From the NCBI RefSeq assembly GCF_000150275.1, contig NW_002060959.1, positions 494,371-558,370 on the forward strand: a stretch of 64,000 nucleotides of DNA. Direction: 5' to 3'. Below the pieces are notes generated by a model, which worked only from the letters and a program-made list of their open reading frames with translations, searched no databases and had not been told where the DNA came from. Positions within the stretch are counted from its first letter, which is position 1; the number at the start of each line of letters is the position of its first letter. This DNA comes from Trichoplax adhaerens. Lineage: Eukaryota > Animalia > Placozoa. The translations under genes were made by a program, and so were the position numbers. Below, piece by piece: positions 22,601 through 52,542 of this stretch.

Positions 22601-22702
22601 ATTTTGCTATAGCTCCAGTTGCCAAATCACATTCTTTCTTCAACATAGTTACTCATTACATGGTTCTACTTTCCAATGATAATATAAACGATTAGTTTAT
22701 AG

Positions 22703-27822: not shown

Positions 27823-30800
27823 ATGGAGTCCAAAACTTTAGATTCCAATCGTTACGAAATAAAAGGCGAAGAAACAATTAAAGATGTTAGAATTGGCTCC
27901 GAAATTTCTTGCACTTTTCTATTTTAATTGTTTGTAGTAGCAATTCTATTAGATGGAATATAGGTTATTAACGCAATTTGATATCATTTAATAAATTAGG
28001 AAGGAATGGATCTCGATGAACCATTGGTCTTAGATGATTCGGTAAGACTATAACGCATTACTAATCATTCTTCCAGAGTATGAAATAGCTTAAAATATTC
28101 TTCTTCTTTACTTTAAAGAGTGATATAGCTTAAAGATGTTTCTCTTCTTGTCTTACAAGAAGGATATACAGTAGCTTAAAGATATTTCTCATCTTGACTT
28201 AAAAAAGAAGGATTAAACTTAAAAGTAGCACTCATCATGACTTTAAAATAATGTAGTTTAAAAATGCTACTCATCATTGCTTAAAAATACTACTGTAGCT
28301 TAAAGAGAATTCCCATCTTGTCTTGGAAGTAGGATATAGATTAAGAGTATTTTTCATCTTGACTTGAAGTGATGTAGCGTAAAAATACTAGCCGTCATAA
28401 TTTAAAAAAGAATGATATATATTATTTCTCATCTTGCCTTAAACGAAGCATATAGCTTAATTGATGGAGCGTCAAAAAATACTACTTATCATGATTTAAA
28501 AGAATGAAATAGCTTAAAATTGGTAGTAATTAGTACTTAACGGAGTGTTGTAATTTAAAAAGGAATGATTTAGCTTTGAAACAGTGCTCGTCAGTTTTGA
28601 AAAGAGTAATAAGGCTTAAAAGTGCTCACTCCTTTCTCTTGACTCCTTTTCTGTTCAGAGTGACGAAGAAGTTACCGTTGAAGTAGAAACTTTCGACGAA
28701 GCTAAACAAGTAAGTCATTACAATATATATTTGCTACATCTAAAATATTCCAACTTAGCCTAGAATTTTATATTACAACCTATATAACATCAACTCATAT
28801 CTATTTTCCTTATTCAATAAGAAAATCGATCAACTGGTTCAGAACGAGAAGAAATTAAAACGCCAATATCGAAAACTGCAACAAGAAAAGGTAAGCTTGA
28901 GCAGCTGTAAGCCTTACTATAGTTTATTTATATTTATGCATGGCTTTATTCCATCCCACTCAATGACGGCATTTTATTTATAGTCTGCAGTTGATGATAG
29001 TAATCGACAATTAAAACAACAAGTAGAAGATTCTAACAAGGTAAAGTTTAGATCCATTTTGGTCCATTCCATTTTCAGTGATTGCTATAGAAAATAATCC
29101 CATCGAACCTAATTTCATTTGATGTAGATCATCGAACAAACTGAAAATGAAAGAAAAAAATTACAAGAGATTATTGAAAAACAATCCGCAAAACTGGGTC
29201 AAGAATATCTATCTGAGGTAATTCAAATGAGATATAGACAATCGCTAGCTTATTTTTCTCATTTTAATGAAAGCTAAAACGGATTATTTCAAATAACCAT
29301 CATAGAAAATTAAAGATCTAGAAAAGCAACGAGATCATTTAAAAGAGAAAAATGACAGCCAGAATAGAGAATTGCAAAGAAAGAGTATGGTCAGTCTTGC
29401 GGAAGTCTTATAAGCAATCTAGATTGAGATACGCATACAACCTATTTCTTGATGAGTGATATGACTCAATTTCAATTTCTTTTATTATGACGTAGATGAT
29501 TGATGAACTTAAAAATAGTAATTCCGACATGGAACTTCGATTGAACTTTGTCATGGAAAGGCAACAAAGACATGACAAGTTAATGGAGGAAAGAAATACA
29601 GATGACGACGCCATTGCTAAAGTAAGATATTCCTCAATGCGATGATACACTGATTAAATTGTTCGTCAATTTTACTTTACTATAAAAGGTCTGTTATACA
29701 ATCCATTAGCAGGGTTTAAAATATATTCTATGCATGAAATAGGTAACGTAATGGACAATTTATTCCATTATTGCTCTCATACATGATTTTTTTTCCATTA
29801 GTTAATGCAAGAAATTGATTCTTACCAAGATGAATTGCAAAACAACTTGCAAAATATTGCTACTACCGGCAATTCCACAAGTCAAGATCAAGATTCCTCC
29901 TTTCAAACATCAACCTCGGATGGGGTAAGTTGATTATTCGATCTCCTAATATGCAAATTTGCTCTCTATAATCCAAGTAATGCTGTAGCCATAGGTAATT
30001 GGCTCATATTTTCTCTCTAATCTTTGCTCAACAGCAAGCTTTGTCAGATGCTCGACTGCAAGAAACAGAAGCTCATTCGGTAGCATCAAGTGCTAGTCGA
30101 CCGGATAGCATTAGCAAGGTAATGAATGACTAATCATCTTTCCAACGATTACTTCTATGCTCTAAAAAATCGAAAATAGATCTATTCAAGATGACCTTCC
30201 AGAGATTGATTTTATTAATTTATTTAGTATTTCTAGTCATCGCTGGTACTTTCATAAAAGTAATGTCGCAATTCTATACATCAACTGAATGATTGATAAT
30301 AGTGCAAGTAGAGTGCATATTTAAAATATATATGGGGATATCAATGAAGATAGATTAAAGTACAGTACTGAAAGCATAGGCTTTAGCAGGGTCTTGTTTT
30401 CATCGTAGATGCAATGCAGACTATAAAAACATAGCATAGAATTGACTTTGTTAAAAAAGTTCCAGCATAAGTACTTCTAGCATATTAGTAAAATTCTTAC
30501 TCCCTATTGGAGAACAATCTGTGCTAGCTATAATATCGATTTTCAAGCATTACCGATGCAGAAGAAAAAGTTCCTTAATTAAAACAACTTGCACTTGATT
30601 AAAATAGGAATTAAATCGATAACCGTATCGGCAGATATTTATGCAACCAGTTATTTGTTGATTTGTTGTCTGATTTTGAACACATTCATGCCTCTTGTTA
30701 CACAGATTTTAGAAGACATCCAGAAAAATACTTCCCAAATGGAAGATGGAATCGATAGTGTTATGACAAAATATCAAGATGATGGACTATCGACTTTGAA

Positions 30801-33800
30801 CGTCGATGAAGATTTCTCTTCTATTATACGAACCAAGATTGAGCAATCTGACGAGGTAATATTAAAATAAATCAAGCATGTCAATGTCGCATTATTTTTA
30901 AATATAGTATTAAAAATATTAATCCAATTTCACGCTATTTCAACGTAAATCTTTTAGAAAATCAACGAACTGGAAAAACAACTCACTAATCTAAAATCAA
31001 GTTCTAATCAGCAATATGATCAAACTATGAAAGAGTTATCGCAAAAAAGTAAATTATTAGAAGAAGCTAGAAGCCAGGTTGACGAATTGCAAAAGGAGAA
31101 GGAAAATCTTCAGCTAGAGTTGCAAGATCTTGAAGCTAAAAGCCCACATGATGAAACCGATCAATTAGGCTTAAAGGATGAGTTTAAGAATAAAGAAAAT
31201 CAATTGCAGGGCGTTGCAAAGGTATTTGAAATAATGTTATTGCTTAAAATTACAAGTCCAGAATAATTGCTAAAATACTGCCATCATAATATCGATCGAT
31301 TGAGCGAATGAATGATTACCTTTTATCAACAGAAAATCGACGATCTCCTTAATTCCAAGGAGAAATTACAACAAGATGTAGAAGAATTAATTGTTCGAAG
31401 AAATTCTCAATTAGTAGCTAAAGAAACTGCCACAGCTGCGTCGTCACCAGTACCTGCAAACTTGAAAGACATTTCTATCGAGACAATTAAGAAATGCCTA
31501 ACTAAAGCGATAGCTATGAGAGAGGAGGTATGTTATTAGATATTATTGGAAAGTAGATTAACTTGTAAGGATATTAAGCTATTAAATGCCCTGATTGGAT
31601 TCAAATTAAATGGATTCTTGCCTGTTGCACATCATGACAGCTCATCGACAAGGTGAAAAAGCGAAGAGATATTTTAGAAGAAAAAGTATCTCTATTAATG
31701 CAAGAATGCGCTGTTGCTGATAGTGATCGCAGAACACAACTTGAAGAAGAAGCAATCAAAATACAATTGGAAATTGAAGAAATCAACAATGTAAAGCTTT
31801 GATCCTCTACTCAGTCTAAATGTAGATTCAGAATTTAGCTATTGCCGTAGGATAAGAAATCAAATAGTGTCACTAATATAGCACAATATCATGATAGGAA
31901 ATTGGTGATGCAGATGACGATATGACCTCGTTCCAAGCTCAATTGGAAAATATCGAAGCACTAGATTCCTGTCCTGATGTTCAAGAACTTCTTGATCAAG
32001 CTAATGATGAAATCGAAGAATTGGAAGTCTGTAAATCACAACTTGAGAAACTGCTAGTAAAGCAACCTGCTAGTGAATTAACAGACAAGCAAAAAGAAGA
32101 GCAACTTCATCAGCTGGAAGATGTAACCAAGGTATGATTGCAATGCTTATTTTTACATTGGAAATTGAATGTGATATTAACCTCAAATTTTGATATCAAT
32201 TATAGAATCTCTCTGAGTTACAAAATGCTGTAGCTGCTAGAAAAGGAGAAATTCAACAGCCCAAAACAGATACAAATGATCCAGAAATGGAGTCGTCATT
32301 AGCTGCATCAGCACTTCTTGCATCATTATATGCTTCCAAAAAGGTCAAAAATAATAACACTAATCAGAACTTTGTTATTTGGCGTTGTTATGCCGCGATA
32401 TGAACTCTCTACAGCTTGATTTCTACCATGTTCACCGAGTAAATTAAAAATATTTTCTTTTGGATTGATAGGCCATTGATATTTTATGTCTTACGAATGA
32501 TGAAAATGTTGAAAAAGAAGCTGAAAGGCCTCGGTCTATTTCGCAAATTAAAGACATTGTTGACAATATACGCGACGAAAGAAAGGTAAGATTCTACTCA
32601 AAGAGAGAGAGAGAGATTGATACGAGGATAATTGCATAGATCTAGAGATACTAGAAAGTCGACACGATTTTATTTTTAAAAAATTTTCCATCCTTGCCTT
32701 TGCAGAGAAGATCAGGTGGTAGTTCGCCTGCTTTATCTCATCACTCTCACGAGGATAAATCGAAAAAAATTGAACAGCAATTGAAAAAATTAAATGAACA
32801 ACTTGATCGCGAGCACAATCTACAAGAGGCAGTCATGTATGAAAAGAATAAAGAATTAATGCATTATCAGAAAGAAAATGCCGAATTACGTGCAAAATCG
32901 CAATTTGATGCTAGTCGCTTGGATGAATTAAACTATAAGAAAACATTGCTTGAAATGCAAGTGGAAGAATTACGTAAACGCTTAAATGAGTTAAATGGAA
33001 GATTTAAGGAAATGATTGGAGGATCCGACGATGAATTAGATCTATCACCAACTGCATCGAGGAAATCATCCGATTCTGACATCGTTTCCAATCGTATCTT
33101 GAGAGACCGTACTAAAGCATTGAGGCATGCTAACGACAAGATACAATTACTTGAGCGTAAAGTGAAAAATCTAGAAGCAAGTTTAGCTGAGGAAACAAGC
33201 CGTGATGAAGATACCTCCATTTCGGAAAGCCAAGATAGCTTATCTAAATTAGATAGTAAATCATTTTATAAACTACAATTAGATGAGAAAAATCGTGAAT
33301 TAGAAGATGCCTCCAAAACGATCGATAATTTGGTATATTCTAAAGCTGGATTGGAGCAAGATTTGCGCGATTCCAAGCATTTTATACGCAGTGATTTAAG
33401 CGGTGCTGTCCAATTACTGAAAGAGCGAACGCGTGCTTTGCAAGATGCAACTAGAAAGATTGCTCAGATGGAGAAAGAGCAAAGTACTTCAGAGACAAGG
33501 AAATTAAATCAACAATTGAAAGAGTTGCGCCATAAAAATGACAGTCTAATACACCAATTAGAGCAATTAAGTGCAGTTTCATCGCCGAATGATAATTCCC
33601 TTTTTGCTGTCTTAGAAGAATGCTATAGAACATTAAATGATTCAACACAGAAAACCAATCATTTGCATAGCCAGAATACCAAATTAACGAAAAAATTAAC
33701 CCAAGCACGAGATGATTTAGAGTTCGCTCAAGCTCGATTAGATGAATTACAATCCATATTAGCTAAAGGCAAAGATAACGATGCGCAGGAAGACGAAAAG

Positions 33801-36800
33801 AAACAAGATGGACAAGAATTTCCACCTCTTGGTGATTTAGCTTATGATCGCGATTCGTTACTTTTACGCTATCGTACTAAAAAATTACATGAGCTACAAG
33901 AGAAAGTAGATTTACTGGAAGAAAAGCTATCGCTAATTGCTAGCAATAAAGTGGAAAACAAAGGGGATAACATTGATACTCGAGAAGTACAGGATTATGT
34001 CTATGTGGATAAATCGGAAACTGAGCCATTAGTTGATAAATTGCGAGTATCACAAGAGCGATCTTTCCAATTAGAACGCGAATTAGAAGAGTTAAAAGCA
34101 ACACAACAAGTTCAAGTTAAGCAATTATTGCAATCTAATCAGCGTATCTTTGCTGTTGAAGAACAAATCGATTCCATAGTTACTAAACAAGAGACTGAAT
34201 TAACCGATCAAACTGAAATTATTACCAGTCAATCCATAAGAATTTCAGATTTAGAGAAAATGTTAAAAGAGAAAGATTCAGCAACCAGTTTTAGTAGTGA
34301 TAGCCGTAAGAGTAGTCCTGCTCCTGGAAAAGAGCACAATGATGATGTTCGATTTCGACGTGAATCTCTACTACAAGAAAGTGCTGATGCCATTAAAGTA
34401 TTGAATCAAGCGCAAGAAAGTGTTAAAACAAGTGGTGATGAAGATGAAGTAGAGAAACGTAATCGCGATTCGTTTATTGAAGATAGCGCTACTGTCATTG
34501 ATATTGTCACCAAGCATATGAGAGAATTAGAAAATGAAAGTGATGAAAGCTTAATCGTGACTGAAAGTGATCAAGAAAGTGCTGCAGCAAGCAATAAAGT
34601 TATTGAAGTGTTAAGCCATCGAATTGAAGAGTTGGAAAAAACCAATACAGAATTAAATAGTAAATTGGATCAATTTACCTCCAAAGGGCATATCCATCAT
34701 TTAGTGGAATCAAAAGATCACATTGAAGAGCTCGAACATCGTTTACAACAGCTTGAAATTGCTAAAGATCATCAAGAATCATTGGATAATGACAATTCAT
34801 TAATGGATCTACATAATGCTAAATTGGCCCAATCGCAGCAAAAGATTGAAGAATTAGAAGAGTGTTTAATTGAGCAAAATCGCCATATGAGCGAAATGGA
34901 AGCTTATATTGAACAATTTGAAAGTGCACCTGATACGATGATTGCTGATTTAAAGCAGCATGTCGATAGTCTCCTCAATGAAATAACAGCCATGAAATAT
35001 GAAAGATTAGCAAGTCGTTATGATAAATTACCATCCTTTGATGAAGGCAGTGAAGAATTGATGCAGAAAGTGCAATCATTGCAAGAATCGCAAGAACATT
35101 TGCTTAAAACGGTAGCTGCATTAAATGATGAAATTGAGAAGAAAACTGAGAAAGCAGCTCAAGCGGAAGTACTCCAACAACAAGTGGATGATTTATTGAA
35201 ATCAGATGAAAATTGGAAGAAGAAATATAAGGAAATGGAGGATTCTATTTCAGTTGTGCAAGAGGTAAGAAAATTGATAGGACAGTCGCGGTTTCTTAAT
35301 CATTCATTACCGTAGAAAATATAACTTGGCTTTGCACAATCTCCTTCCTCATTTCTATTCTACATAGTCGAGATTTTTCTAGTTATTTGATGAGTAGAAT
35401 TTTGCGGAAATGTTCAGTGAGGCTAAATGAGTAGAATACTGAAGGAAATGTAGACACCTTACCCGACAAAATGCGAGACTAATTAGTCGAGATTTTTTCT
35501 CAATTTCTTTAATAGCAAAATTTGGGGAATAACTAAATGAGGCTAGATAAATAAGATATTGAAGGAAATATAGACGCTTTACCCACCAAAATATGCAGGA
35601 TATTCGTAGAGATTTTCTAGTTTCTTTACAAACAAATTTTTTGTAATTGTAATATAAGGCTAGATACATGCACTAATGATTCAATTCATTATGAGAAGAT
35701 TTTGCCTTCATTGATAGTTACAACATTTCATTTACTTTATGATATTATTGATCAGTACAGTAGTGTAATTGAGCTCGAAAAAATATCGCTTTCAAGGATG
35801 CTAATTGTAGGCATTACTCTATGCACTAATGAATAAGAAGGGCAGAAAATTTGCCTCTATCTGTACTTCATTATATTCTAATTCTCGTCTATGTTGCTAA
35901 CATCCATTTCTACCATTCCAGCTATCATTCATGCAATATAATAATAATGAATCAGAGAAAGACAACCTACAGAAGCTCTACGATGAAGAAAAAGAAAGCA
36001 CAGATAAACTCCAATCTGAAATTGCTAAGAAAGAGAAAGATATCAACAAACGAGAAATAGAGAAGCAATCGCTATTGAAGGAAATTCAACAACTGCATGA
36101 GAAAATTGATGAATTATCCATCGTTATTGCAGAAATGGGTCGGCAATTAAATGAATTAGAAAGTTGTAAATCAGAACTGGAAGAGAAACTTGCTACACTA
36201 CGAAAATTAAAGAGCGAGCCAACATCAGCCGAGTTGTCCCCTCGTGATCGTAGCCTAAGTGAAGAATCATCCCGTAGTACTCCTCGTAAAATGGTGATCG
36301 AAGAGAAAGTTATACCGACGATATTGCAGACAGTAGAAGCTCCTCCATCACCACCCAATGTTGCCGATGTTACTCAAGAGCAATATGATGAATTATTGCT
36401 ACAAAATGAACAACTACGAGATGCATTAACCAGTGAAAGTGAGCGTAAACTGGAACTAGAATCGACTTTAGCGACTAAAGAAGAAGAATGTAGCCAATTA
36501 AAGCAACATTATGAAGCGATCACTGAAGAATATTCTCGATTAGTTGCTAAATTAGAGGATATGACTGCTATTGAAGAGCTTCTCAGCCATGATGCTACTG
36601 TCGATTCTAAATTAAGCGAGCGCGTCCAAGCTTTAATCGATGAATATGCTCGTATCTTTGAAGTAGTTTCTCATCAGCGTGATGAAATTGAATCATTGAA
36701 GGAAGAATTAGAAGCTAAAGATCAACATCTTGCCGAATTAATCGAGCAATATCGCAGTGTTTCATCAGCAACTGGATTCTCTAGTGATGATCAAGAAAAT

Positions 36801-39800
36801 CATACTGAACTCAATGAACAACTATTACTTAAATTGCAAGAATTAGAGCTTACTTTGCAAAAGAAAGATGAAGAATTAGCTAAAGCTACCGCTGATATGA
36901 AAACAATTGAGGAAGAATTTGCTGCATTAAGGAATGAATCAGAAAATTTAATTCGAATTGCAAATCTTGAAGAATCTGAAAAATTGTTGAAAGAACGAAT
37001 ACAAGAGTTGGTAGATCAATTACATGAGAAAGAGAAAGGTAAAGGTTCTAGCTTTGGAAGTGATCAAAGTCAATCGGATGAGAATAGCGATGAATTGAAG
37101 CAACATTTAAGCCAAGTTTTGGAAGATAATGAAACTTATGCTAAAGCTTTGCAGGAAATTATTAAAGAAAATGAAGACCTTAAGGCTGATATTCAATCTA
37201 AGGATGAACAAATGCTGACATTAATTGATAGTTATGAACAGTTGAAAGAAGAAAATGCTGAATTAAAAGGAAGCCTAGAACAAGTACTTTTAAAAAATGC
37301 TGAGTTAACTACCGAGCTAGATGGGTTAACTCAAGCTGAAATAGATTTGCAAAATAAAATTACTGCAATTCAAGAATCTTACCAAGACGTCCAAGATGAT
37401 ATTACTAATCTACAATCGGATATACAATCGAAAAATGATCAGATTGAAAAATTGACTGAACAATTGCAAGCTAAGGGTGATCAACCTGATAGTCAAGAAG
37501 TGGATAATCTTCAAAATGAAAAGGAAAGATTAACTGCTGTAGTAGAAGACTTGACCAATAAAGAAATGCAATATAACGATAAGATACAAGATTTAGAAAA
37601 TTCAGAGCAACAATTGCTAGGAAAAGTAAATGAATTAACAGAAGAAGTCAATGAAATGACAAAGACATCGGAGGAAGATCGTGAATTTATTGAACAGCTA
37701 GAGAACGATATTAGCACTAAGAATGATGAAATACAATTATTGATGCAAGAGAATAAACAACTTTCTGCTAAAGCTGAAGAAATAGCTCTTACTGCTGCAG
37801 TATCCGATCAAAGTAATGATGTACTAGATGTACTCAAGCAGGAAAATCAATCTTATGTGGAAAAGTTAGCAATTCAATCTGAAGAAATCAATGAATTACA
37901 AGAAAAATTAGCCTCCAAAGTCAATGAATTAGCGGATCAATCATCCTTAATGGATTCTATCCATGCTGAAAAACAAGAGCTTAGTACAGGATTAAGTTCT
38001 AAAGCAGATGAATTAGCTAATCAAACTTCATTAGCGGAATCAATGAAGACGAAGAATGATGAACTACTCGCTCAATTAGCAGCTAAAGTTGAAGAAGTAA
38101 CCAATCTATCTTCTACTCTTGATTCTATTAAGATTGAAAATGAAATGTTAAAGGCAAAAGTGGAAGAATACACAACTTTACAAAGTGAATTAGACGATAA
38201 AATAGGTGAAATAGAAGAAGAAAATGAAAATCTTCATGATAAAATTGATGAGTTAAATGAGGAAATCCAACGTCAACAACTACTACTATTAGAAGAAAAT
38301 GAGGCTACCAATAAAATTAAGGATAGCTTGCAAGAAAAGATTGAGCAAGTCAATCAATTAAATCGCCAATTGGAAGAATTGGAAAATGAAAAAGAAGCAC
38401 TATCCACTGTTTTATCACAATCGCGGAGTAGTGATGATGAAAAGCAACAATTGATGATTACTAATCAAGAAAAATTGCAATCTCTACAAGCTGAATTGCA
38501 GCAGAAAAATGAACAACTTGAAACTTATCATCAAGATATTGCATCATTACGAGATGAAAATAATACTTATGATAATAAAGTGAACCAACTTATAGAAGCA
38601 CAAGGGAAACTTGATGCTGAAATAGCTCTCTTACAAAATACTGAATTAGGGTTAAAAGATCGCATTCGAGAATTGGAAGATGATGCTCAACAGACTAGTG
38701 ATCAGATTGGAAAGAAAGATAATCAATATCAGCAACTTGTGGATGAAATGAATGGGAAGAATGCTGAAATAGATCGTCTACAATCAACATTAGCAGATAC
38801 CTTAGCTCGCAATACAGCTCAAGAAGCTTTTACCACAGAGCAGACAAATGCAAGCCAAGAGATGGAAGAAAAATTACAAAATACCATCGGTGAAAACAAA
38901 TCACTAGCTCAGATATTAACAGAGCACAAGCAACGAATCGACGAGCTCGAGCAAGCCTTAAATATTCGAGAAGAAGAGCTTGTCCATGCTACGGTGGAAT
39001 TAGATCAATTAAAAGAGGACAAAAATCGCTTATCCAGTGACCTACGAGAATTAGATGTGGATAAACAACAATTATTTACTAAATTATCCGAATTGGACGG
39101 TCGTCGCAAGATATTAAATACCACTGTTGAAGAGCTCATGTCACAAAATGCTCATCTACAACAAGATCAATCCATTATTTCTAATTTAAATAAGCGTATC
39201 GAAGAATTAGAAACGAAGGAAGCTACATTGAAAAATGAGCTATCTTCAGTGGAAGAATCTGTCAAGGTAAATTGGCAAATGAATTTATGTTTATATAGAG
39301 AATAATGTTATTAAAGTCGATTATAATAAAGTTACCGTCATATTAAGATGCAGCACTGTAGCTTAGCATGATTTGTGTAGATTGATAGATATAATTAGAG
39401 GTATTACATACTCGCATAAGATGCAAATTCTTGATATAGCGATGAGTTAGATAGTATTGTGATGCTTAACTACTTCAATAAAGTTATGCTTATACAGAAC
39501 AGATTTTGTCATGAAAGCTGGACTATCTTACCATTTGCAAAACCATCGACAAGTTGAAATAACGATGGCTTGTGATTTATATCTTTTGTTTCTTCTAGTT
39601 TACCTATTATCAATTAGCTAGTGAAAAAGAAGCATCTGACTTTACATCGGATCATGATCAAGTTGTGGATGGTAGTCAGCAAGTCGATCTTACTTCCGAA
39701 GATCAACCGGTAAATAAATTAGTTGATTTCATTAGGAAATTGCTCTTACGTGGGAGTGAATAGAATCCATTAATATCTGTAGTCTACTTTCTTTATCATC

Positions 39801-42800: not shown

Positions 42801-45800
42801 AGCTGTATAAGTATAAGCTAATATTACTATTGATACTACAGTATGTTGATTCTACTTCGATTATAAGTACAAATTAATATTACTGCTATTATTTTACTTA
42901 CAAGTTGATTAGTTGCTATAAGTTTAATTCTACTTTAGCGATAAGTAGAAACTAATATTTCTATTCTTGGCGGCAAACAGTTTGCCTTTTTCCAAAATAA
43001 TACTTCAAGTAGCAGCGATAAATCTGGCAAAAATTCTATTACCGACCAGACTCATGGGCCTATTGACTCCGATACGGAGATACATATTGCAGCAGCAGAT
43101 GCAGATCAACACCTTCATGAATTGAAAGCATCGGAGTATTCTCTACGTGCAGAACTCGCCTATTTAACTCAAGAGAGTAACTTACAAGGATTAGATGATC
43201 CAGAAAGAGTCACTACACTGATTAATAGAATCCATGAATTAGAAGCTATTGAGGGAGACTTAATCAGCCAGATTCAAAACTTAGAAGATTCTCTCAAGGT
43301 AAGCGAAATCAATCCTTAACTTGAATAGATGATAGTTGGTTTTTAATACCTTGCCTATCATTGCAGTTTGCCTACTATCAGTACGCAACCAGCACAGGAA
43401 CACAACAAGATCCAACTGAAACTTCCAAAGATGATAGCAAGAAAAATCTCCATCCACAAATCGAAAGTAAACTTGTCGACTTGAAAGATTGCGAACTCCG
43501 TCTGAAGGATCAACTACAAGAATTACTTCGCAATGATTTCTTTGATGCTCCTTACTCTATCGATGCTACATCAGCAAAAGAACAACTAAAAGAATTAGCA
43601 ATAATTGAAGAAGAATTTATGTGCAAAATCGCTGATTTAGAAGGGCAAATTAAGGTAAAAGTTGTTATCATGAGTGATGTAGAATCATTTTAGTTATTAT
43701 ATTCCAGCTTTTCTGATCATCGCTCGGTAACATATTCCTGTAGTTTTATCAAGCCATGGCTGAAAATGCAAAAGAAGCCAATAAAATATCAGAATTAGAA
43801 AATGAAAATGATCGATTAAAGCATCATGTTAATCGATTACGAGGAGAAATTGACACAATGCGCAAAGAGATCCATCAACAAACTCGAGGGAAAATACTGA
43901 CTGTAGCTCAACAGGAAGAGCTCCAGCGTGAGAATAGCCAATTGAGATCAGCAATCGACAGCATGAATAGCGATATTAAGGTAATCTTGCAATTCTTTCT
44001 ACACAACCATAAGGTATCATCATTGTATGCCTTGACCATGATATCGTCTATTTCTAATTCAATATTTTAACGCGAAACTAGAGCGGTAGTATTAACTTAG
44101 ATAAGTACGAATATTTCATCAATCCGACATCCATCCAAACTAGCTCGACGCAAACACCGGCAGGATCCTCGTATGAAATTGAATGGAGTAAAGGTAAATT
44201 TCAAGTAGTAGCAATTTTATTCCACTTGTTTTACTCAGCTTGCATTGCTCGGCTTGCTTTGCTCAATTTGCTGAGCTCAGCTTGCTTTGCTAACATGCTT
44301 TGCTTAGCTTGCTTTGCCCTGCATACTTTGCTCAACTTTATTTGCTCTCCTTGCTTCGCTCTTTCCTTTGCTAATGCTTCCTTTCGCTATTGCCTTACCC
44401 ATCTCTAATTACGTAGATGCCAAGCTTACGCAAGATAGTGATACAAAAATCGTCAGTGCTCCTGACGATTTATCATTGAATGATAGTGCAGACACATTAA
44501 CTTCTGTTTCTGCAGCTACACCAACATCAGAACAAATTTACAGCTCTAAACTAATTAATAAAACCGATACTATGTTCCATACTGCTGTCAGTGATTCACT
44601 GAATAAGGAGATTGGTAGTATTCCTGATGAGGAAAAATATACACCAATTTCATCACAGCAGTATTACTTAACCAAGATGGAATCAGGCTCATTTGCTCCT
44701 GTTTCAAGCTCGAAAATTGGCTTAGGCCAAATGATAGTTGATTCATCTAGCCCATTAAGCTTTGGCGGTAAAGAAGAGGAACTTTCCTTAATTATTGAAC
44801 GAGAATTTGAATTTGGACCTGATCATGAGGAATTGCCTACCATCAATTTAGAAAGGGAACAACACGTTAAAGGCATTAGTAGTCCTTTCGATGCCATGCT
44901 AATTGACCGATTTGCCTTAGATATGACTGATACAATCTTAGATAGTGTCTTCCCTGTGGATTTAATGACAAGCTATGATCAAGAAATACGCCGTTGGCTA
45001 AGAAAAGCTCAAAAGAAATTAACCGATTTAGAAATTATGAAAGCGAAACGTAATCAAGAGATGATGGCCAAAGAAACCGCTGTCAAAGAATTCCTTCATC
45101 AACAATTTGTTGAACAACTAAAATCGTTAACAGAAGCAAATAGTCAATTGATGGAAGAAGAACAAGCAACATTGCAAGAAAATATCCTCAATTGGACCAA
45201 TGTTATCAAGATTGCACTCTTGCAGGTGCTCTGCAGGCCTGAACAAAGTAAACATGAGAAGGATATGAAAGAATTTTTCAAGACATCCTTTGAAGAATTT
45301 AAGCCTTTACAAGATAAATATGGCTCTAAATTAAATCAAGTTTCATTACAAATTTTAGCTGAAAATGATGGTCGCCATATTTTCCACGAATTAAAATGTG
45401 AAGAAACCGACTCCGATTTGAAAAATATGCTAGAAAATTGCTGTCAACGTATTCAGGAGCTCGAATCCATGCATCATGAAAGCGATTTAGACGATGATCA
45501 GTGGCAAAAATTACCCGATTATGGTAACTTAAATCGGCAATTATCAGCCATACAAGATGCTCTATCGCAATCTTTATCCAAAGAGAATACACAACAGTTG
45601 CAAATTTTCAATTTAGAAACTGAAAATTACAATCTCAAACGTGAGATTGAATTCGACGAGAAATTAATATTAGAATTGCGAACAGAAATGTCTAACTTAG
45701 AGCCAGTCAAAGCTGAAGCGGAAAGGCTGAAGAAATTATACGAAAGGCAAAATAAAGAATTGCGAGCGTTACTATCCAAAAGCGACTTAAGCGGTCCTAG

Positions 45801-48800
45801 TAGTGGATCAGGAAATAGTAGTGGCTCCGATGATGAATATTCGCAACATAGATCGCGTTCACCTGTATCAACCGGCAGTAAAAAATTAGCATCCCTACAA
45901 GAACGTTTATTGAAAGAAGATTTAGAAATTGCTGAAAAGAAAGTCCATGAACTAAAAGATTATAAACAGCTCTATGTCGTCCAAAGCAAGAGATTAACTG
46001 AATTGGAAAGGCGATTACAACAATTACATGAACAGCGTCGATTTGATTTCGAGAAAGAATTACAAATACGCAAAAAATTAGATAACAGTCGTGATAGAAT
46101 TCGAAAGCTCGAAGGTATGTTAAAAAATGCACAAGTAGATGAAATTGAAACCAAGGACGCTTTATGGGAAACCCAATCGCAATTATCGATGTTAGAAGAA
46201 GAACGAGAAGAACGTGAATCATCCTTAACAGAAGAACTACGCCAAGCTAAAGATCAACTCAATCAATTGATGCAAACCAATGATGAATTGAAAACACAAA
46301 TGGATGAATTAGAGAGCCTAGCTGGTAGGAAATCATCAGATTTAAAAGATGCAAGGGAAACTATCGATCAATTGGAAGAAATTAAAATGTCACTAACCGA
46401 AACATTAGCAACAACTTTACAACAACTTGATGAAACAGCTGAAGATTTAAATAAAACCAAGAGTGAATTAATGACTACCAAAGATGAGATTGACTATGTC
46501 AAAGAGGACTATAACAAAGAGAAGGAAGTTGCAACGCAAGAAATTGATGTTCTACGCCATTCTTATCAAGAATTAAATCGGTTATTAAGTGAAAAAGAAT
46601 TCACAACAAGCTCATTACAAGAGGATATTGTTAAATACCAACAAGATTATGCTAAATTTAGAGAGAAAGATTTCCTAACCACGGATATGGAACGAGATAT
46701 TGATGATTTACGAGAGAACTTAATCCAAGCACGCCATCAATATCAAGACTATGTAGCTGAAGCAGAAGAAGCTAAAGCTGATCTAATCAATCGATTAAAT
46801 AGTCAAGAAAATAAAATGAATGAATTGCAAGAAATAGAAGAGAAATTAATAGAAGTAGAGGAGAAATGTAAAGCCATCGAACAAGAAAATAACGATTATA
46901 AACAGCAAATTGCTGCTACACAAAATCGAACTGATGAATTACAACAGAAACTGGATCGTGTTGTTAAATTTACCGATAGCAATGCAATGGATAAAGAAAT
47001 CAAAGCTGGTGTTATCCAAAATTTATATGATATTATTAGTCATCTTCATGAAATGCGCGAAGAAATTGAAGAACTAAAAGACCGTCCATGTCCGATTATG
47101 TTTGAAAAAGATGATGATGGTGCAGCACATTCGACCATTATTTCTGATCCAGCTGAAAAAGAAGTAGTGCAAAATGTTGATGGACCAGCACAAAGAAGTC
47201 CAAGATTGCAAGATTTATGTAGTGCAATGGCTGATCAAATCTTAAATTCGGTTATGGACACCTTTAGAAATGCATCAGGTGTCAAATCTCAACCGTTAGC
47301 AAAAGTAGAAGAGAAAAAGGAAAACGAAGAAAACTTAGACAGTACCATTCACAGTATTGTTTCCGATGCCATTTCCGATGCTTTAGCTGAAATGGACGCT
47401 ACTAGTGAGCATGGGTTAGATTTAGTTAGCGAGAATGATCAATATAGCATAGTAGCTATCGCTGGAAGTGTTCTCGACGGTAGTGAATATTCTATACAAA
47501 CAAAACCAGAATCAGCCATGAAGAAAGATAGATCATTTATAATAGAGCATGCTATTACTGCTGAATCATTAGATGGATTAGAAACTAAAGTCCATCAAGC
47601 CACCACGATTACAGAAAATCTCTTATCTCGCATCATGAATATTTCTGAAGAAGATGAGCCAAAGGTGGCAGAGGTGGAATACCAAACCCTTCATCAACCT
47701 GATAGGATCGAGGCTATGGTAGAAGTAGAATGCCAAACCCTTGACAAACCTGATAAGATGGAAGCCACGATCGAAGCAGAATGCCAGACTCTTGATCCAC
47801 CTACAAAGATCGAAGCCGAGGCACAAACTTTGCCAATATCGGAAGAGCCAGATTTAATTTTAGCTCATGTCGATCCAAAAGAACAACATTTAGTTCCTAT
47901 AGAATCGAATATTGTTAAAGCTGATGTAGTTGCTGATAGTGCTACGCCGCTTGCTGCTGCTTCTGCTAATAGTAGTTCTGATAAATTGTTACCACTTAAT
48001 ATTTTACCACCAGCACTGCCTACTGCTAATCCTCCAACTTTAGATTCTTCCAATACCAAATGGGCAACTCCTAAAATCACTCATATTGGACCGCAGCCTC
48101 AAGATTTTGGTAGCCAATTTGACTGTACACAAGTCATGGAAAATGTTTATCCAGCAACAGCTCCCATTTCCGAATTGGATCGTCTTGATATGCTGTACAT
48201 TTCCAAGTCTGATTATAATCTTATCAAGGATAAAGTAATCACACTTGAAAAAGCAGTAAAAGATAAAGAAAATAAGTTATTTAAGACCAAGGTAAACATT
48301 TTCTATTTGTGCCTTGATGATTGGTATTTAAGTAGACGTTACTAGTTTTGTTATTGACTTTTTTGAATTTACTTGCAGCTGGAGAAAAAGGCACCAGAAC
48401 CAATTTATAATCCAACGATGGACGAATCTGCATTAAGTGTCATCTATAATTTGCAAAAGGAAGTTCAAGCTAAAAATAAAGAATTAGATAGCCTACGTGA
48501 TGAGGTTTGTTGATCTTGTAATTGAATTTACTCATAATTAATTCTATAATTGCATGCTAGAAGTGCGTTTACTCATATTAAAACCAATCTATGCGTGGAT
48601 AAAATAGTGTCTGTTTTTAACGTACACTTGTTGTATTAGATGGCTAAGCAGAAGAAGAAGGGCAATACTGATGATGAAGAATTTAAAAATCAACAACATA
48701 TGATTGATTATTGGCGTCGAATGACGAATACAGCTGAAGAAGAAATTCGACGATTGAGATCAGCTTTATATTCTATTAACGATCCAACGTATCGCAATGA

Positions 48801-51800
48801 CAATAGCAAAATATTGCAAGAGATCGAGGAATTACGGGAAAAGTTAAAGGAAAATCAAGCGACAATTAGTGAATTTGAAAGTCTTAAAGACGAGCTAGCG
48901 GAAATTACAGCTGAAAATCAACAGCTTCGAGATAAAATGCAAGAATTGGATAAGAATTTCCCTGAGGTTCAGCAGCAATCGCAATCCAATGTATCTGTTG
49001 ATGAGGCAAACTATCTGAAAGCAAAAGTTGCCTTATATGACGATGTTGTACGAGATAATAGTGAATTAAAGTCTAAATTAGTATTGACGGAAACCATTGA
49101 AGAAGAGAATAATTTACTCAAGTCCAAAATGAAAGTCTTGGAAGATATGCTAGCCGATAGCGACCAGATGAATTATAAGATTTCTTCCTTACAAGTAAGT
49201 AATGTATCATAGCTAATTTTTACTAAGGACATCAATAGTAATGATGAATACAGATTGAGCGCGATGAATTATTGCCAGTAATCTACGATATTTAAGAAAT
49301 AGGAATAGCTAATGATGCAATCGATCGTACAATTTCAGAGCGAACTAGCTAATCGAGTTGCTGCCGAGCAAGAACGCAATTTATTAAAGGAGAAATTAGA
49401 AGAAAAAGAAGTGCAACACTTAGAATTAGTAGATGCCCTGAATGAAATTACTTCCCTTCGTGCACAATTAGAACATTTACACGAAATTGAACAAGAAAAT
49501 GAAGATATTGTACAGCAAAATCTTTCCTTACAAGCTAAATTACATCGATTGCAAATGGTGGAAAATGATCGTGACAAGCTACAGAAACAAGTAGAAAATT
49601 ATGAAAAGGACGATACAATCATTCGCCATGAATACAATCAATTACAGGAAAATTGGACATACCTTAATCGACGCTATGACGAATTAGTAAAAGAAAACGA
49701 TGAACTCAAAATTCAACTAGACGCTGAATCAAAAGATAGAATTCAAGCTGAAAAGGATAAAGAAGACGTTGAAAGCATTTACGCGGTAAGAATTTTAACT
49801 TTCCATTAGAGTATCCAATCCTGTAATAGTGTAAATACGGGCAATCAATGCCATAGCTAGCGATCAAAATAGAACTGTTCTAATTCATTATTCTTCTTTT
49901 GCAATAGAATCGACTCAATGATTTACAAAAGGGCAACTCTCAAAAAGACGATGTTATTCATCATTTAAGTTCAGAACTTAATCGAATTAAATCCACTGAT
50001 AGAAAAAAATCCAATGGTAATAACGGTAGTCAGGAAACGATTCACGCAAGTACCTATTCCTTACCAATTTTAAAAGACAACAACAAGGTATGACTAGCTA
50101 GTCTTAAATTTGAATCTTATCGCTATAGTTAGCTGATCTACATGCTGGATGCATTTTATACATCCTACATTGGAACCGTTTTAGTAATATTTAGCTCTAA
50201 CTAGTCTGTAGGAACGTATCCTATTGACAGTAACACAAATTAGTAGGAGTTTCACGCTCTCTCTGACTAGTCTACATGAGTATACCTTATAAAAGGCGAA
50301 CAGTAGAGCTTTCAAGCTCTTTCTAACCAGTCTACACGGGTATATCTTATAAAAGCTAAATTAGTACCGTAGGGACTGCAAGCTCTCTTTAACTAGTCTA
50401 CGTGAACATGTCTCATAAAAGCCAAACTAGTAAGAAATACAGCTTTCTTTAACTAGTCTATATGAACATATTTTATAAAAGCCAAATTATTAGGACTTGC
50501 AAACTTTCTCTAACTAGTCTATATGAATATATCGTATGAAAGCCAAATTTGAACTATAAGAGTATTTTTACGCCATCATCACTAATAAAATAATCATTTA
50601 TTCTCAATTTATAGCCGCATCTCGATTCAACACCTGACCATTGGTTCCAAAGACAGCAGCGTGATTCTGCATCGAAAAGCAGAGAAAGGCATGCTTCTCC
50701 AACTAGACCAGGCAGCCAGTTATCATTTCAATCGACTGATCGAATGAAATTAATGTATGCATTGTTTGATTATGATCCTCAAACGCAAAATACTTCAGGA
50801 TATCCTGACGAGGAGCTTCCTATACGTCAAGGCGATCGAATTTATGTCTATGGTGATATTAATAGGAATGGCTACTACAAAGCTGTGCGAAATGATCGTG
50901 TCGGCTATATTCCTAGCACTTTCTTAGCTGAAGTTGAAACATCATCACGTCAAGATTCTCCCCATAGCGATACTAACTATAGTGGTCGAGTAAGTGTAAG
51001 TCCTGAAATGATCCTTAGCCTACCTAATGGTAACAACATTGATCAACATTATCCTCGATCAACCTTGAGCTATCCACAAGATAATAAACTACCTCGTAAT
51101 CTTCCTTCATCACCTGAATTAAAACGCTCCAAGCCTGAATTAAAGCAGCCATCGCCCCCAGCAGCAGTGCATATCATGAGAACTTTACGCCATGGTATTC
51201 TGCTTGGATGGAATAAACCGGTTATGGATTCTAGTGAAAGGAGTAACGGTCATAAAGTCATTGGTTATAAAGTGAAAGTTAACGGATTAGCTGTCAAATC
51301 TTGTTTTGGCGCTAATATTTGTAAAGTAGAATTAGAAAATCTCGATTTAACTCGGCCATTTGACGTTTCTGTGCAAACGTTAACCGAAGGTGGAATTTCA
51401 TCCACGCCTGCTAGTCTCTATGTCCAAGCTCTTGCTACTCCTGATCATCCACATTTAGATAAAAATCAAGATGGTAACGTAGGTCGAAGTTATGTTGCTC
51501 AATACGATTATCAAGCTAAAGGTTATACCGATGATACTGGTCTAACCGATATTACATTCAGAAAAGACGATTTAATTAAAATTATTAATACTGAAAGGAA
51601 CGATGGTTTTTATGAAGGACATGTTAATGGTGTTTACGGCTTAATTCCCCGTGATTTTATAACTGAATTTGGATTATCCAATGCCATTAAAGATCCTAAT
51701 TATCGACATGCAGAGCAATATAACGAACCTGCATCTAGAGTAACTTCATCAGCATTTGTTAGACGTAAGCCAAGCAAGACCAAAGGGCGCAAAATGATCG

Positions 51801-52542
51801 CGCTAAAAGATTATACACCCAACCGATATTCCAATGAAAGACGAGGTAGCGCATTAAGTTTTAAGAAAGGCCAGATTATTATGGCATTAGGCGAAGTTAA
51901 TCCAGACGGTTTTGTCCGTGGTATATGCAATTACAAGACTGGCTCTGTTCCAGCTAATTATTTGCAGGATTACGATGATTTTATGCGTTATGGCGAACAT
52001 GATCCTGCGGCACAAGAAATTCAACACACTCAATATCCACGAAACGTCGCTCCACCATTAATTAATGGTGCATCTAAAGATAGAGATGCTATTCCAACAT
52101 TACCTCATAATGGTCACGTACAAACTGGAAAATTCGCCAAATTATTAGATGTTAGTTCATCAGATGATGAAGTAGAACAGCAACAAATTCATCTAACACC
52201 AGAGCCAACATCGAAAGAATCATCACCTAGAATTCGATCAGATTCTCGCTTAGCTATGCTGGAAGAAAGTCAGAAGGAAAAGGAAAATCGTAAAGCTCAA
52301 CAAATTTTAGACTCAAATTAGTAAGTTTAAATTTGAAGTCTTTTATCTTTGATGCTCTATCTACAAGTGATAAAAGGCAGATTATGATAATAAAATTGAG
52401 TTAATCGATAAATATCAATCCTATTTTTAATCAACCACATCAATTTTTACTATTTAGCTACCGCCAAGATTCCACAGATAAACCGAAAAAATCGAAAGGA
52501 AGTGTCCTTTCATTCGGCAAACAGCTCTTTGGCAAGAAATAA
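27823..52542 (+). CDS. Giant coiled-coil scaffold with C-terminal RIM-binding-protein-like SH3-FN3-SH3-SH3 module (~5,600 aa, ~35 exons)
   Basis: Continuous in-frame GT-AG exon chain from 27823 (MESKTLDS; true start uncertain). It runs through small exons at 28000-32585, large exons at ~32706-35263, 35922-39266 and 44417-48291 with small exons between them, then 48379-48504, 48640-49194, 49339-49785, 49908-50087, 50615-52320 and final exon 52458-52542 (..KPKKSKGSVLSFGKQLFGKK*). E/K/L/Q-rich heptads throughout; SH3 and FN3 domains in the penultimate exon. Confidence 0.8.
28085..28625. repeat. Intronic degenerate minisatellite (~39-42 bp unit)
   Basis: Repeated (a/g)tagcttaaa.at...ctcatc.tg.cttaa over ~540 bp. 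Confidence 0.75.
35367..35670. repeat. Intronic ~120-bp tandem repeat (~2.5 copies)
   Basis: gagatttt..ct...aattt....gaggctaa/gata...ata(c/t)tgaaggaaat.tagac..ttaccc..caaaat at ~35368, ~35487, ~35609. Confidence 0.7.
42370..42960. repeat. Intronic degenerate minisatellite (~55-80 bp units)
   Basis: About 9 copies of gattctacttt.g.t.taagtataaa.taatatt.ct.tta. Confidence 0.8.
44236..44394 (+). repeat. Intronic (T)TGCT-rich low-complexity tract, 18 YGCY motifs
   Basis: Direct count of TGCT/TGCC/CGCT in 44245-44394, inside the intron 44194-44416. Confidence 0.8.
50190..50550. repeat. Intronic minisatellite (~60-65 bp unit, ~6 copies)
   Basis: ctc.ttaactagtcta..tga..at.t..tataaaagc.aaa.tag recurring. 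Confidence 0.75.
50747..50935 (+). other. SH3 domain 1 (RIM-BP type)
   Basis: ALFDYDP....EELP...GD.IYVYGD....GYY.......GYIPS.F; long RT loop and VYGD..GYY resemble RIM-BP SH3s (VYGD..GFY). Confidence 0.85.
51149..51426 (+). other. Fibronectin type III domain (single)
   Basis: PSPPAAVHI..ILLGWNKP...SNG.KVIGYKVKVNG...LENL....VSVQTLTEGGISS; the SNG-x-x-V-x-GY signature resembles RIM-BP FN3. Confidence 0.8.
51485..51973 (+). other. SH3 domains 2 and 3
   Basis: YVAQYDY..DITFRKDDLIKI..DGFYEG..GLIPRDFI and MIALKDY..ALSFKKGQII..DGFVRG..GSVPANYL. Confidence 0.85.

What the first reader, a model, noticed from the sequence alone, without database searches (positions are those of the whole stretch)
27823..52542. 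Giant (~5,600 aa) RIM-BP-like scaffold: very long coiled-coil rod fused to SH3-FN3-SH3-SH3
Seen: about 35 exons splice in frame from MESKTL.. to ..GKQLFGKK*, joining ~5,000 aa of acidic coiled coil to three SH3 domains and one FN3. Known: RIM-BPs (RIMBP2, TSPOAP1, fly Rbp) are ~1,000-1,900 aa active-zone proteins with SH3-(FN3)x3-SH3-SH3 that link CaV channels to RIM. Long filamentous tethers (Bruchpilot/ELKS, Bassoon, golgins, AKAP9) are separate proteins. Inference: one polypeptide combining a channel/RIM-binding head with a tether potentially hundreds of nm long. It could be a secretion-site, junctional or basal-body scaffold, which would be striking if the host is a neuron-less placozoan.
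Basis: partly seen in the sequence, partly recalled or inferred. Interest (0 to 1): 0.85.

Follow-up and report, generated by a model that had tools for sequence, protein, structure and literature searches.

The report
Giant rod protein with RIM-BP-like head
This is a real, expressed gene that joins a very long acidic helical rod to a C-terminal SH3–Ig–SH3–SH3 head related to RIM-binding proteins, but it is a second paralogue from a widespread, unstudied animal family (vertebrate C4orf50 and giant invertebrate proteins), not the canonical RIM-BP, and only its last third is confirmed by RNA.

Summary
The last large exon encodes SH3 / Ig_RIMBP2 / SH3 / SH3 (Pfam; AlphaFold and Foldseek).

Spliced RNA contigs from two runs confirm the six 3' introns. 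They put the head on the same transcript as the rod exons from 46800 onward. The weakest link is a 1.3-kb non-coding gap at 39710-41016.

The same genome has a separate canonical RIM-BP (SH3, three FN3, long linker, two SH3) on another contig. In trees the window's head sits at the base of a separate "compact head" clade with 100/100 support.

That clade includes 2,000-4,400-aa predicted proteins of a coral, molluscs, an annelid, a brachiopod, amphioxus, a crinoid and fishes ("C4orf50 homolog"). Six of the invertebrate proteins also carry an N-terminal JAKMIP_CC3 domain. In gar, a JAKMIP gene lies 570 bp upstream of the C4orf50 homologue.

So the rod-plus-head fusion is ancestral, not a placozoan oddity. 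Function is unknown; a PxxP-binding tether is inferred.

The parts
27823..32585 (+). Modelled exons 1-17, all joined in phase 0: 27823-27885, 28000-28041, 28659-28709, 28822-28890, 28984-29040, 29128-29217, 29306-29389, 29496-29621, 29802-29924, 30035-30118, 30706-30855, 30958-31221, 31333-31527, 31641-31790, 31898-32131, 32206-32343, 32472-32585. About 680 aa of short acidic, partly heptad-like modules. The start codon is uncertain, because an acceptor-like TTTATAG lies directly upstream of the ATG.
   Evidence: Exon chain; sequence read; no RNA test; no Pfam family.
32655..35264 (+). Exon 18, 870 aa, acidic helical rod with linkers.
   Evidence: Open frame; exon chain; no Pfam family; about 60% heptad-like.
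35922..39266 (+). Exon 19, 1,115 aa, the most regular coiled-coil part. Donor is AAG|GTAAAT, phase 0.
   Evidence: 85% heptad-like. AlphaFold model of 36522-38321 is about 96% helix, mean pLDDT 74.7. A weak, non-significant JAKMIP_CC3 match at 36750-37019 (15 bits).
39599..39709 (+). Candidate exon 20, 37 aa, acidic, with good splice sites (TTCTTCTAG| ... |GTAAAT).
   Evidence: unverified.
39710..41016 (+). Longest modelled intron, 1,307 nt. This is the weakest link of the one-gene model. It is single copy, with no ORF, tandem repeat or Rfam match.
41017..44193 (+). Modelled exons 21-28: 41017-41313, 41429-41548, 41685-41870, 42130-42336, 42981-43298, 43382-43654, 43744-43980, 44082-44193. Coiled-coil modules that mostly end ..K|GTAA. 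Exon 21 has no methionine, so it cannot be a first coding exon.
   Evidence: the intron 42337-42980 is filled by a 132-nt tandem repeat; no RNA test.
44417..48291 (+). Exon 29, 1,291 aa. It starts with about 400 aa that are not coiled coil, continues with about 500 aa of coiled coil, and ends with about 390 aa of mixed, Pro-rich tail containing a 51-nt tandem repeat (47677-47817).
   Evidence: RNA contigs cover 46800-48291 and splice at 48291. The 5' acceptor at 44417 is not verified.
47347..47400 (+). AKAP-like amphipathic helix ('IHSIVSDAISDALAEM'). A lead only.
   Evidence: It is the only strict-pattern match in the model, with 0.21 expected from shuffles; binding could not be tested.
48379..50087 (+). 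Exons 30-33 (48379-48504, 48640-49194, 49339-49785, 49908-50087), 436 aa of coiled coil directly before the head.
   Evidence: All four exons and their introns are confirmed by spliced RNA contigs in runs X5 and X7.
50615..52320 (+). Exon 34, the head: SH3-I 50744-50932, Ig_RIMBP2/FN3 51146-51430, SH3-II 51485-51667, SH3-III 51788-51970, a disordered tail, then a helix.
   Evidence: Pfam. AlphaFold gives four domains with pLDDT above 90. Foldseek matches Drosophila RIM-BP SH3-II with TM 0.91-0.93, rmsd 1.0 A and about 40% identity. RNA joint 50087|50615.
52458..52542 (+). Exon 35, a 27-aa basic tail and the stop codon.
   Evidence: RNA joint 52320|52458 with 143 nt on the far side; frame check.

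Best explanation
This is one protein-coding gene on the + strand. Its product is a giant acidic alpha-helical rod ending in a compact SH3-Ig-SH3-SH3 head and a short basic tail.

It is the placozoan-type member of an ancient animal family distinct from canonical RIM-BP. That family includes vertebrate C4orf50 and the 3,000-4,400-aa invertebrate proteins that combine an N-terminal JAKMIP_CC3 domain, a long rod and this head.

Inferred mechanism:
- The rod dimerises as a coiled coil and acts as a spacer or tether up to a few hundred nm long.
- The three SH3 domains dock proline-rich motifs of partners at one end.
- The almost uniformly phase-0 exons allow rod length to be varied by exon skipping.

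Shown: the domain content, the clade, expression, and the physical link of the head to at least the last ~930 aa of rod. That rises to ~1,400 aa if the RNA contig runs on collinearly.

Inferred: the full 5,607-aa length (my odds about 0.65), dimerisation, the partners and the cellular site.
For: - Gene model: 35 exons and 5,607 aa, with all six RNA-proven introns recovered exactly.
- Transcript: spliced RNA contigs link exon 44417-48291 through four small exons to the head and the last exon. The unspliced form of intron 50088-50614 has roughly 13- to 29-fold lower depth than the spliced contigs.
- Head: Pfam SH3 x3 plus Ig_RIMBP2. AlphaFold folds four confident domains, and the best fold matches are RIM-BP SH3 and FN3 structures.
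- Paralogy: a separate canonical RIM-BP exists in the same genome. The compact head is single copy.
- Tree: the window head joins the 20 compact-head proteins on one side of a 100/100 branch, as their sister. The own-genome canonical Ig domain falls inside the canonical side.
- Family members: Stylophora 3,046 aa, Haliotis 4,296 aa, Owenia 3,892 aa, Branchiostoma 3,890 aa, Mizuhopecten 3,508 aa, Lingula 3,803 aa, Antedon 2,862 aa, and fishes named 'C4orf50 homolog'. Six of them have JAKMIP_CC3 at the N-terminus and the head at the C-terminus.
- For one gene rather than two:
  - The 25-kb block of same-strand coding exons sits alone between about 14 kb and 8 kb of non-coding DNA.
  - 32 of 34 junctions are phase 0, on both sides of the gap.
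  - Exon 41017-41313 has no Met.
  - An RNA-proven intron of 527 nt shows that long introns occur in this gene.
- Rod: a 600-aa sample is about 96% helix, and the net charge is about -430.
Against: - No RNA evidence exists for any junction upstream of 48291.
- The 1,307-nt gap at 39710-41016 is twice as long as any other intron of the model.
- At 5,607 aa the protein would be longer than any family member seen (maximum 4,362 aa). The 3' part alone (41017-52542, about 2,900 aa) would be a typical family size.
- In vertebrates the family is annotated as two adjacent genes, so a split is biologically possible.
- The N-terminal JAKMIP_CC3 domain and other conserved blocks of the invertebrate giants are not detectable in the window, either exon by exon or by tblastn.
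- The window head is a long branch (1.3-1.6 changes per site), so its exact position is soft.
- No binding partner was tested.
Confidence: 0.7

Rival explanations
1. There are two adjacent genes on the same strand. One is an upstream pure coiled-coil gene (27823 to about 39760, about 2,700 aa). The other is a downstream gene of about 2,900 aa (an unseen first exon in 39.8-41.0 kb, then 41017-52542) that alone carries the RIM-BP-like head. This would mirror the vertebrate JAKMIP1 / C4orf50 gene pair.
For: - The gap 39710-41016 is the longest non-coding stretch inside the block.
- The open frame of the candidate exon 39599-39709 runs into a stop at 39761 if its donor is not used.
- A 3' product of about 2,900 aa fits the family's size range, whereas 5,607 aa exceeds it.
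- Gar has separate JAKMIP and C4orf50-homologue genes only 570 bp apart.
- Phase-0 exons join in frame whatever the true structure is, so the in-frame chain proves little.
Against: - Exon 41017-41313 has a good acceptor and no Met, so a further upstream exon is needed. No coding-looking ORF lies in the gap.
- True intergenic spacers around this locus are 8-14 kb.
- In six invertebrate phyla or classes the N-terminal part and the head are predicted as one protein.
- Both halves share the same unusual phase-0 exon style.
Confidence: 0.25
2. It is this organism's canonical RIM-BP (orthologue of RIMBP2, TSPOAP1 or fly Rbp) with an unusually long N-terminal extension, working with RIM and CaV2 at release sites.
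For: - The head domains are most similar to RIM-BP domains among solved structures and named proteins.
- TSPOAP1 and RIMBP3 also have N-terminal coiled coils (my own knowledge, not tested here).
Against: - A separate gene with the canonical layout exists on contig C1405: SH3-I, three FN3, a linker of about 900 aa, SH3-II and SH3-III. Its Ig domain nests in the canonical clade.
- The window head lies across a 100/100 split from that clade.
- The window has one Ig/FN3 domain, not three, and no long linker.
Confidence: 0.04

Closest known systems
Canonical RIM-binding proteins (RIMBP2, TSPOAP1/RIMBP1, Drosophila Rbp)
   Same: They share three SH3 domains of the RIM-BP type (the 'DGFY.GE..G..G..P' motif) and an Ig_RIMBP2/FN3 domain between SH3-I and SH3-II. 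The best sequence and fold matches are to their solved SH3 and FN3 domains. Both paralogues of this genome have a similar short basic C-terminal tail.
   Different: The window has one Ig/FN3 domain instead of an array of three. SH3-II follows the Ig domain after about 15-20 residues instead of a linker of hundreds of residues. The head sits at the extreme C-terminus of a rod of thousands of residues. It belongs to a separate clade, and the genome has its own canonical RIM-BP.
C4orf50 (vertebrates) and unnamed giant invertebrate proteins, for example Stylophora XP_022782888, Haliotis XP_067656819, Owenia CAH1782831, Branchiostoma CAH1257702, Lingula XP_013405946, Mizuhopecten XP_021350814
   Same: They have a long coiled-coil N-terminal part and a compact SH3-Ig_RIMBP2-SH3 head at the C-terminus, and fall on the same side of the 100/100 split. 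Stylophora and one unnamed protein (P0004) also keep a further SH3 after the Ig-SH3 pair, as the window does.
   Different: The window protein would be the longest (5,607 aa against at most 4,362 aa). It has no detectable JAKMIP_CC3 (invertebrate giants) or DUF4527 (vertebrate C4orf50) domain. Outside the head no similarity passes BLAST or HMM thresholds. The family has no experimental characterisation; PMC13657826 calls C4orf50 'poorly characterized'.
JAKMIP1-3 (Marlin-1, NECC1/2)
   Same: They are long coiled-coil proteins. Their signature domain JAKMIP_CC3 forms the N-terminal part of the invertebrate members of the window's family. In gar, a JAKMIP gene lies immediately upstream of the C4orf50 homologue on the same strand.
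   Different: No significant JAKMIP_CC3 match exists in the window or anywhere in this genome; the best scores are 17 and 15 bits. JAKMIPs have no SH3 head.
Filamentous tethers (ELKS/Bruchpilot, golgins, rootletin, CEP250)
   Same: They share the general design of a very long coiled-coil rod with a binding module at one end. Automatic annotation names the window's relatives after these proteins.
   Different: There is no specific homology. Those names reflect coiled-coil composition only, and none of these proteins has the SH3-Ig-SH3 head.

Membership tests
RIM-BP superfamily (head homology) | SH3 domains flanking an Ig_RIMBP2 (PF25523) domain | tested here: met
   PF25523 scores 70 bits against a cut-off of 27, and there are three SH3 matches. 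AlphaFold gives four folded domains. The best fold and sequence hits are RIM-BP SH3-II/III and RIMBP2 FN3.
Canonical RIM-BP (RIMBP2/TSPOAP1/Rbp) | Central array of three FN3 domains and a long linker before SH3-II/III | tested here: not met
   There is one Ig/FN3 domain (residues 178-272 of the head exon), and SH3-II starts at about residue 291. The own-genome gene on C1405 does have the canonical layout.
Canonical RIM-BP (RIMBP2/TSPOAP1/Rbp) | Groups with named RIM-BPs in a domain phylogeny | tested here: not met
   The window head lies with the compact-head proteins across a branch with 100/100 support. Named RIMBP2 sequences (P0036, P0133) are on the other side.
Canonical RIM-BP (RIMBP2/TSPOAP1/Rbp) | SH3 domains bind PxxP motifs of RIM and CaV channels | not testable with these tools
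C4orf50-type giant proteins (compact head) | SH3-Ig_RIMBP2-SH3 with a short Ig-to-SH3 spacer at the extreme C-terminus | tested here: met
   Domain map of 150 homologues: 28 have this compact layout, and the window shares it.
C4orf50-type giant proteins (compact head) | More than 1,000 aa of coiled coil N-terminal to the head in the same polypeptide | tested here: met
   RNA contigs join 46800-48291 and four coiled-coil exons to the head. One contig runs a further 1,405 nt upstream.
C4orf50-type giant proteins (compact head) | Falls in the compact-head clade | tested here: met
   In the careful IQ-TREE run, window plus 20 compact heads form one side of a 100/100 branch, with the window as their sister. 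An AU test shows only that a basal position is as good as a nested one.
C4orf50-type giant proteins (compact head) | N-terminal JAKMIP_CC3 (PF16034), present in invertebrate members | tested here: inconclusive
   Present in six invertebrate giants at 50-154 bits. The window gives only 15 bits inside exon 19, and weak non-collinear exon hits. Exons were searched one by one, so a diverged domain split over small exons could be missed.
C4orf50-type giant proteins (compact head) | DUF4527 (PF15030), the Pfam signature of vertebrate C4orf50 | tested here: not met
   Present in the gar homologue but absent from the whole genome of the window. It is also not reported for the invertebrate giants, so it appears to be specific to vertebrates.
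A-kinase anchoring proteins | Amphipathic helix that docks the RIIa dimerisation domain | tested here: inconclusive
   There is one strict pattern match at 47347-47400, with 0.21 expected by chance. RIIa-domain genes exist in the genome.

The most novel reading that the evidence does not exclude
The window gene is the placozoan representative, and the longest, of an unrecognised ancestral metazoan scaffold. That scaffold has a JAKMIP-type microtubule- or motor-binding N-terminus, a rod of variable length built from phase-0 exons, and a RIM-BP-like triple-SH3 head. Vertebrate JAKMIP1 and C4orf50 would be its two split halves. In a neuron-less animal it would tether secretory or membrane sites (possibly CaV- or RIM-type PxxP partners, possibly PKA through an AKAP-like helix) to the cytoskeleton over hundreds of nanometres.
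Probability: 0.3. Interest if true: 0.75.

Novelty: new member of a known kind. Interest (0 to 1): 0.55.

Why it matters
- It shows that animals have two ancient RIM-BP-like lineages, and that a neuron-less animal with a small genome keeps both. The second lineage is unstudied: human C4orf50 is still described as poorly characterised, with only a co-expression hint towards regulated exocytosis (PMC13657826).
- Invertebrate members fuse a JAKMIP domain to this head, and in gar the JAKMIP gene and the C4orf50 homologue are immediate neighbours. Together these give a testable hypothesis for the function of both vertebrate genes.
- The placozoan gene, with an RNA-confirmed 3' end, is a tractable entry point for localisation, partner pull-downs with the SH3 head, and cell-type expression.
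- For the question of how presynaptic scaffolds arose, studies that count only 'RIM-BP' in early animals may miss or conflate this paralogue.

Tried and rejected
- Protein database searches with rod exons (35940-39302 and 37803-39302) found nothing.
- An exact look-up of a neighbouring ORF, meant to expose the public annotation of the locus, found nothing. The tool says records of this genome or a near one may be left out. I did not try to get round that.
- tblastn of 14 giant homologues against the window matched only the head.
- HMMs of the conserved N-terminal, central, pre-head and JAKMIP_CC3 blocks of the giants gave only weak, non-collinear exon hits. Pfam on 10 upstream exons gave nothing. 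I therefore could not use conserved N-terminal domains to fix the 5' end.
- PF16034's best genome hit (C1407) is not a JAKMIP gene.
- The 1.3-kb gap is not a repeat and holds no Rfam family.
- An AU test of 'window plus canonical' did not reject that grouping. This is because a basal position of the window satisfies both groupings.
- Complex prediction (AKAP-like helix with the RII-like docking domain) was not available.
- The protein-atlas search was busy.
- Supplementary tables of Najle et al. 2023 held as text had no Rimbp, Jakmip or C4orf50 entry.
- The joined protein was never built or searched.
Full report
**What is in the sequence**

The + strand between about 27.8 and 52.5 kb is a dense block of open frames. 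Four are very large: 32655-35312, 35901-39302, 44308-48342 and 50615-52318. On either side lie about 14 kb and 8 kb without coding-looking frames.

I wrote an exon-chain search using codon log-odds trained on the large frames, GT/AG sites and an intron penalty. With a moderate penalty it returns 35 exons, a 16,824-nt CDS and 5,607 aa, from the ATG at 27823 to the stop at 52542. It reproduces all six introns later proven by RNA.

Thirty-two of the 34 junctions are phase 0.

**The head**

Exon 50615-52320 gives Pfam SH3_2 (8.5e-32, three stretches) and Ig_RIMBP2 PF25523 (1.9e-19; 70 bits, cut-off 27). AlphaFold, run with a 15-sequence alignment, folds four domains at pLDDT above 90, separated by disordered linkers:
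- SH3-I, residues 44-106;
- Ig/FN3, residues 180-270;
- SH3-II, residues 291-351;
- SH3-III, residues 392-452.

Foldseek's closest single-domain matches are:
- Drosophila RIM-BP SH3-II (4z88; TM 0.91-0.93, rmsd 1.0 A, about 40% identity);
- Drosophila RIM-BP SH3-III bound to a Cacophony peptide (4z8a);
- human RIMBP2 SH3 and FN3 domains;
- the RIM-BP FN3 array (6q9m).

Sequence search of the PDB agrees. Named database hits in the allowed length range are RIMS-binding protein 2 and TSPOAP1.

**Transcript evidence**

Of the runs that hold 46800-52600, X5 and X7 are RNA libraries. Their contigs skip six GT..AG introns: 48292-48378, 48505-48639, 49195-49338, 49786-49907, 50088-50614 and 52321-52457.

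One X7 contig of 4,233 nt runs from the big exon, continuing 1,405 nt beyond the 5' edge of what I laid, through four small exons into the first 30 nt of the head exon. The intron-retaining form of 50088-50614 is present at roughly 13- to 29-fold lower depth than the spliced contigs. Runs X1 and X2 are unspliced and behave as DNA.

So head and rod are one message for at least about 930 rod residues. That becomes about 1,400 if the contig runs on collinearly.

Nothing upstream of 46800 has been tested with RNA.

**The rod**

- The model has 1,158 D/E against 726 K/R.
- A crude heptad scan marks 49% of residues, against 11% in shuffles. It marks 85% of exon 35922-39266.
- A 600-aa sample of that exon is modelled as about 96% helix, with helices up to 276 residues.
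- Exon 44417-48291 has two stretches of about 400 aa that are not coiled coil and match no Pfam family.
- If all the heptad-like parts formed one extended coiled coil, they would span roughly 400 nm. This is an inference from 0.15 nm per residue.

**Which family**

The same genome (105.6 Mb, 1,414 contigs) has a stronger PF25523 match on contig C1405. That gene has short coiled-coil exons, SH3-I, three FN3-like domains, a linker of about 900 aa, SH3-II and SH3-III, which is the canonical RIM-BP layout. The compact head is single copy.

I searched 1.84 billion representative proteins with the head. The best hits are only 33% identical. They include many proteins of 2,000-4,400 aa with the match at the extreme C-terminus. 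Their names are automatic: 'CEP250-like', 'golgin-like', 'rootletin-like', 'JAKMIP3', and in fishes 'C4orf50 homolog'. They come from Stylophora, Haliotis, Mizuhopecten, Owenia, Lingula, Branchiostoma, Antedon, Polyodon, Lepisosteus and others.

A domain map of the 150 best hits separates two classes:
- a compact class, 28 proteins, in which the Ig domain is followed at once by an SH3;
- the canonical class, in which a long spacer follows the Ig domain.

Two trees were built.
- Ig plus the next SH3, 100 rows, quick search. The two classes separate with SH-aLRT 100. The window is on the compact side, and the own-genome canonical Ig is inside the canonical side.
- SH3-I plus Ig plus SH3, 51 rows, careful search. 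Window plus 20 compact heads form one side of a 100/100 branch, with the window as their sister.

An AU test did not reject 'canonical plus window' as one side of a branch. That is what a basal position implies, so it does not contradict the trees. The window head is a long branch, so I treat 'sister to the other compact heads' as likely, not proven. That position fits a placozoan orthologue.

**An unexpected family trait**

Six invertebrate giants carry an N-terminal JAKMIP_CC3 domain (PF16034, 50-154 bits) as well as the C-terminal head. The gar C4orf50 homologue has DUF4527, Ig_RIMBP2 and SH3. In the gar genome, an 842-aa JAKMIP_CC3 gene ends 570 bp upstream of it on the same strand, and a CRMP-like amidohydrolase gene follows.

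This suggests that vertebrate JAKMIP1 and C4orf50 descend from one ancestral gene. I found no paper that says so. C4orf50 is described as poorly characterised, and in breast-tumour RNA it co-varies with regulated-exocytosis genes and with JAKMIP1 (PMC13657826).

In the window and its genome, JAKMIP_CC3 and DUF4527 are not detectable. The other conserved blocks of the giants are not detectable either.

**One gene or two**

Points in favour of one gene:
- the isolated block of same-strand exons;
- the same phase-0 exon style on both sides of the gap;
- the absence of a Met in exon 41017-41313, which therefore needs an upstream exon;
- a proven 527-nt intron, and tandem-repeat-filled long introns elsewhere in the gene;
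- the fused state of the family in six invertebrate lineages.

Points against:
- the 1,307-nt gap at 39710-41016;
- a size beyond any relative seen;
- the vertebrate two-gene arrangement;
- phase-0 exons join in frame regardless of the true structure.

I put the single 5,607-aa product at about 0.65 and the two-gene reading at about 0.25.

**Mechanism (inferred)**

I infer an acidic dimeric rod that acts as a spacer, with a triple-SH3 head that docks proline-rich partners and a short basic tail.

- The SH3 domains keep the RIM-BP-type motifs, as seen in the sequence.
- The partners are unknown. CaV or RIM binding is possible by analogy only.
- The symmetric phase-0 exons would let splicing vary the rod length. 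Relatives have many predicted isoforms.

**Limits**

- Records of this genome were withheld from two tools.
- Complex prediction and the protein atlas were unavailable.
All searches used single exons by reference.

Noticed in passing
G000:C1405:~493,700-503,400 (minus strand; loci L001, L004, L005): This is the canonical RIM-BP gene of the same genome. It has short coiled-coil exons, SH3-I, three FN3-like domains (PF25523 at 98 bits on the third), a linker of about 900 aa in a 1,019-aa exon, SH3-II, SH3-III and a basic tail.
   Followed up: partly
window 47347-47400 (+); weaker look-alikes near 45030 and 47260: An amphipathic helix, 'IHSIVSDAISDALAEM', fits the AKAP RII-binding pattern. It is the only strict match in the model (0.21 expected by chance), and ten giant homologues have none. 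The genome has six RIIa-domain loci, including RI-like, RII-like and SPA17-like ones.
   Followed up: partly
window 42467-42965, 50236-50549, 44225-44361: The longer introns of the gene are filled with tandem repeats of periods 132, 60 and 14 nt. The 60-nt array lies inside the RNA-confirmed 527-nt intron. The 14-nt array is the 'YGCY-dense intron' of another first-stage note.
   Followed up: partly
window 27823-52542: 32 of 34 modelled junctions are phase 0. Many exons end ...AAG|GTAA after a '...LE.S.K'-like motif. This suggests growth by exon duplication and allows frame-preserving exon skipping.
   Followed up: partly
window 52458-52542 and C1405 ~493.7k: The giant and the canonical RIM-BP of this genome end in similar short basic tails: '..KPKKSKGSVLSFGKQLFGKK*' and '..KKKKSPLSGKFSGKKLIQKISNKKGKKK'. 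This may be a shared membrane- or partner-binding motif.
   Followed up: no
L008 (spotted gar, CM082492.1:42,960,760-43,023,326): The gene order is a JAKMIP_CC3 gene (842 aa), then the C4orf50 homologue (2,288 aa) 570 bp downstream, then a CRMP-like amidohydrolase gene, all on one strand. Together with invertebrate proteins that fuse JAKMIP_CC3 to the RIM-BP-like head, this points to a gene split, or a split annotation, in vertebrates.
   Followed up: partly
window 60630-61481 (-): A 284-aa ORF starts 'MGCGASKS..', a myristoylation/palmitoylation-type N-terminus, followed by a Lys-rich stretch. It has no Pfam family and no exact database record.
   Followed up: partly
window 13500-27800 and 52600-60400: These are unusually long stretches without coding-looking frames on either strand, flanking the giant gene in an otherwise compact genome.
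   Followed up: no
proteins P0001, P0003, P0005, P0006 (JGI, ENA, Logan; organisms unnamed): These form a tight clade of compact-head proteins with up to four SH3 domains before the Ig domain, from environmental or transcriptome contigs. They are the nearest rows to the window head by path length, and their organisms are unknown.
   Followed up: no
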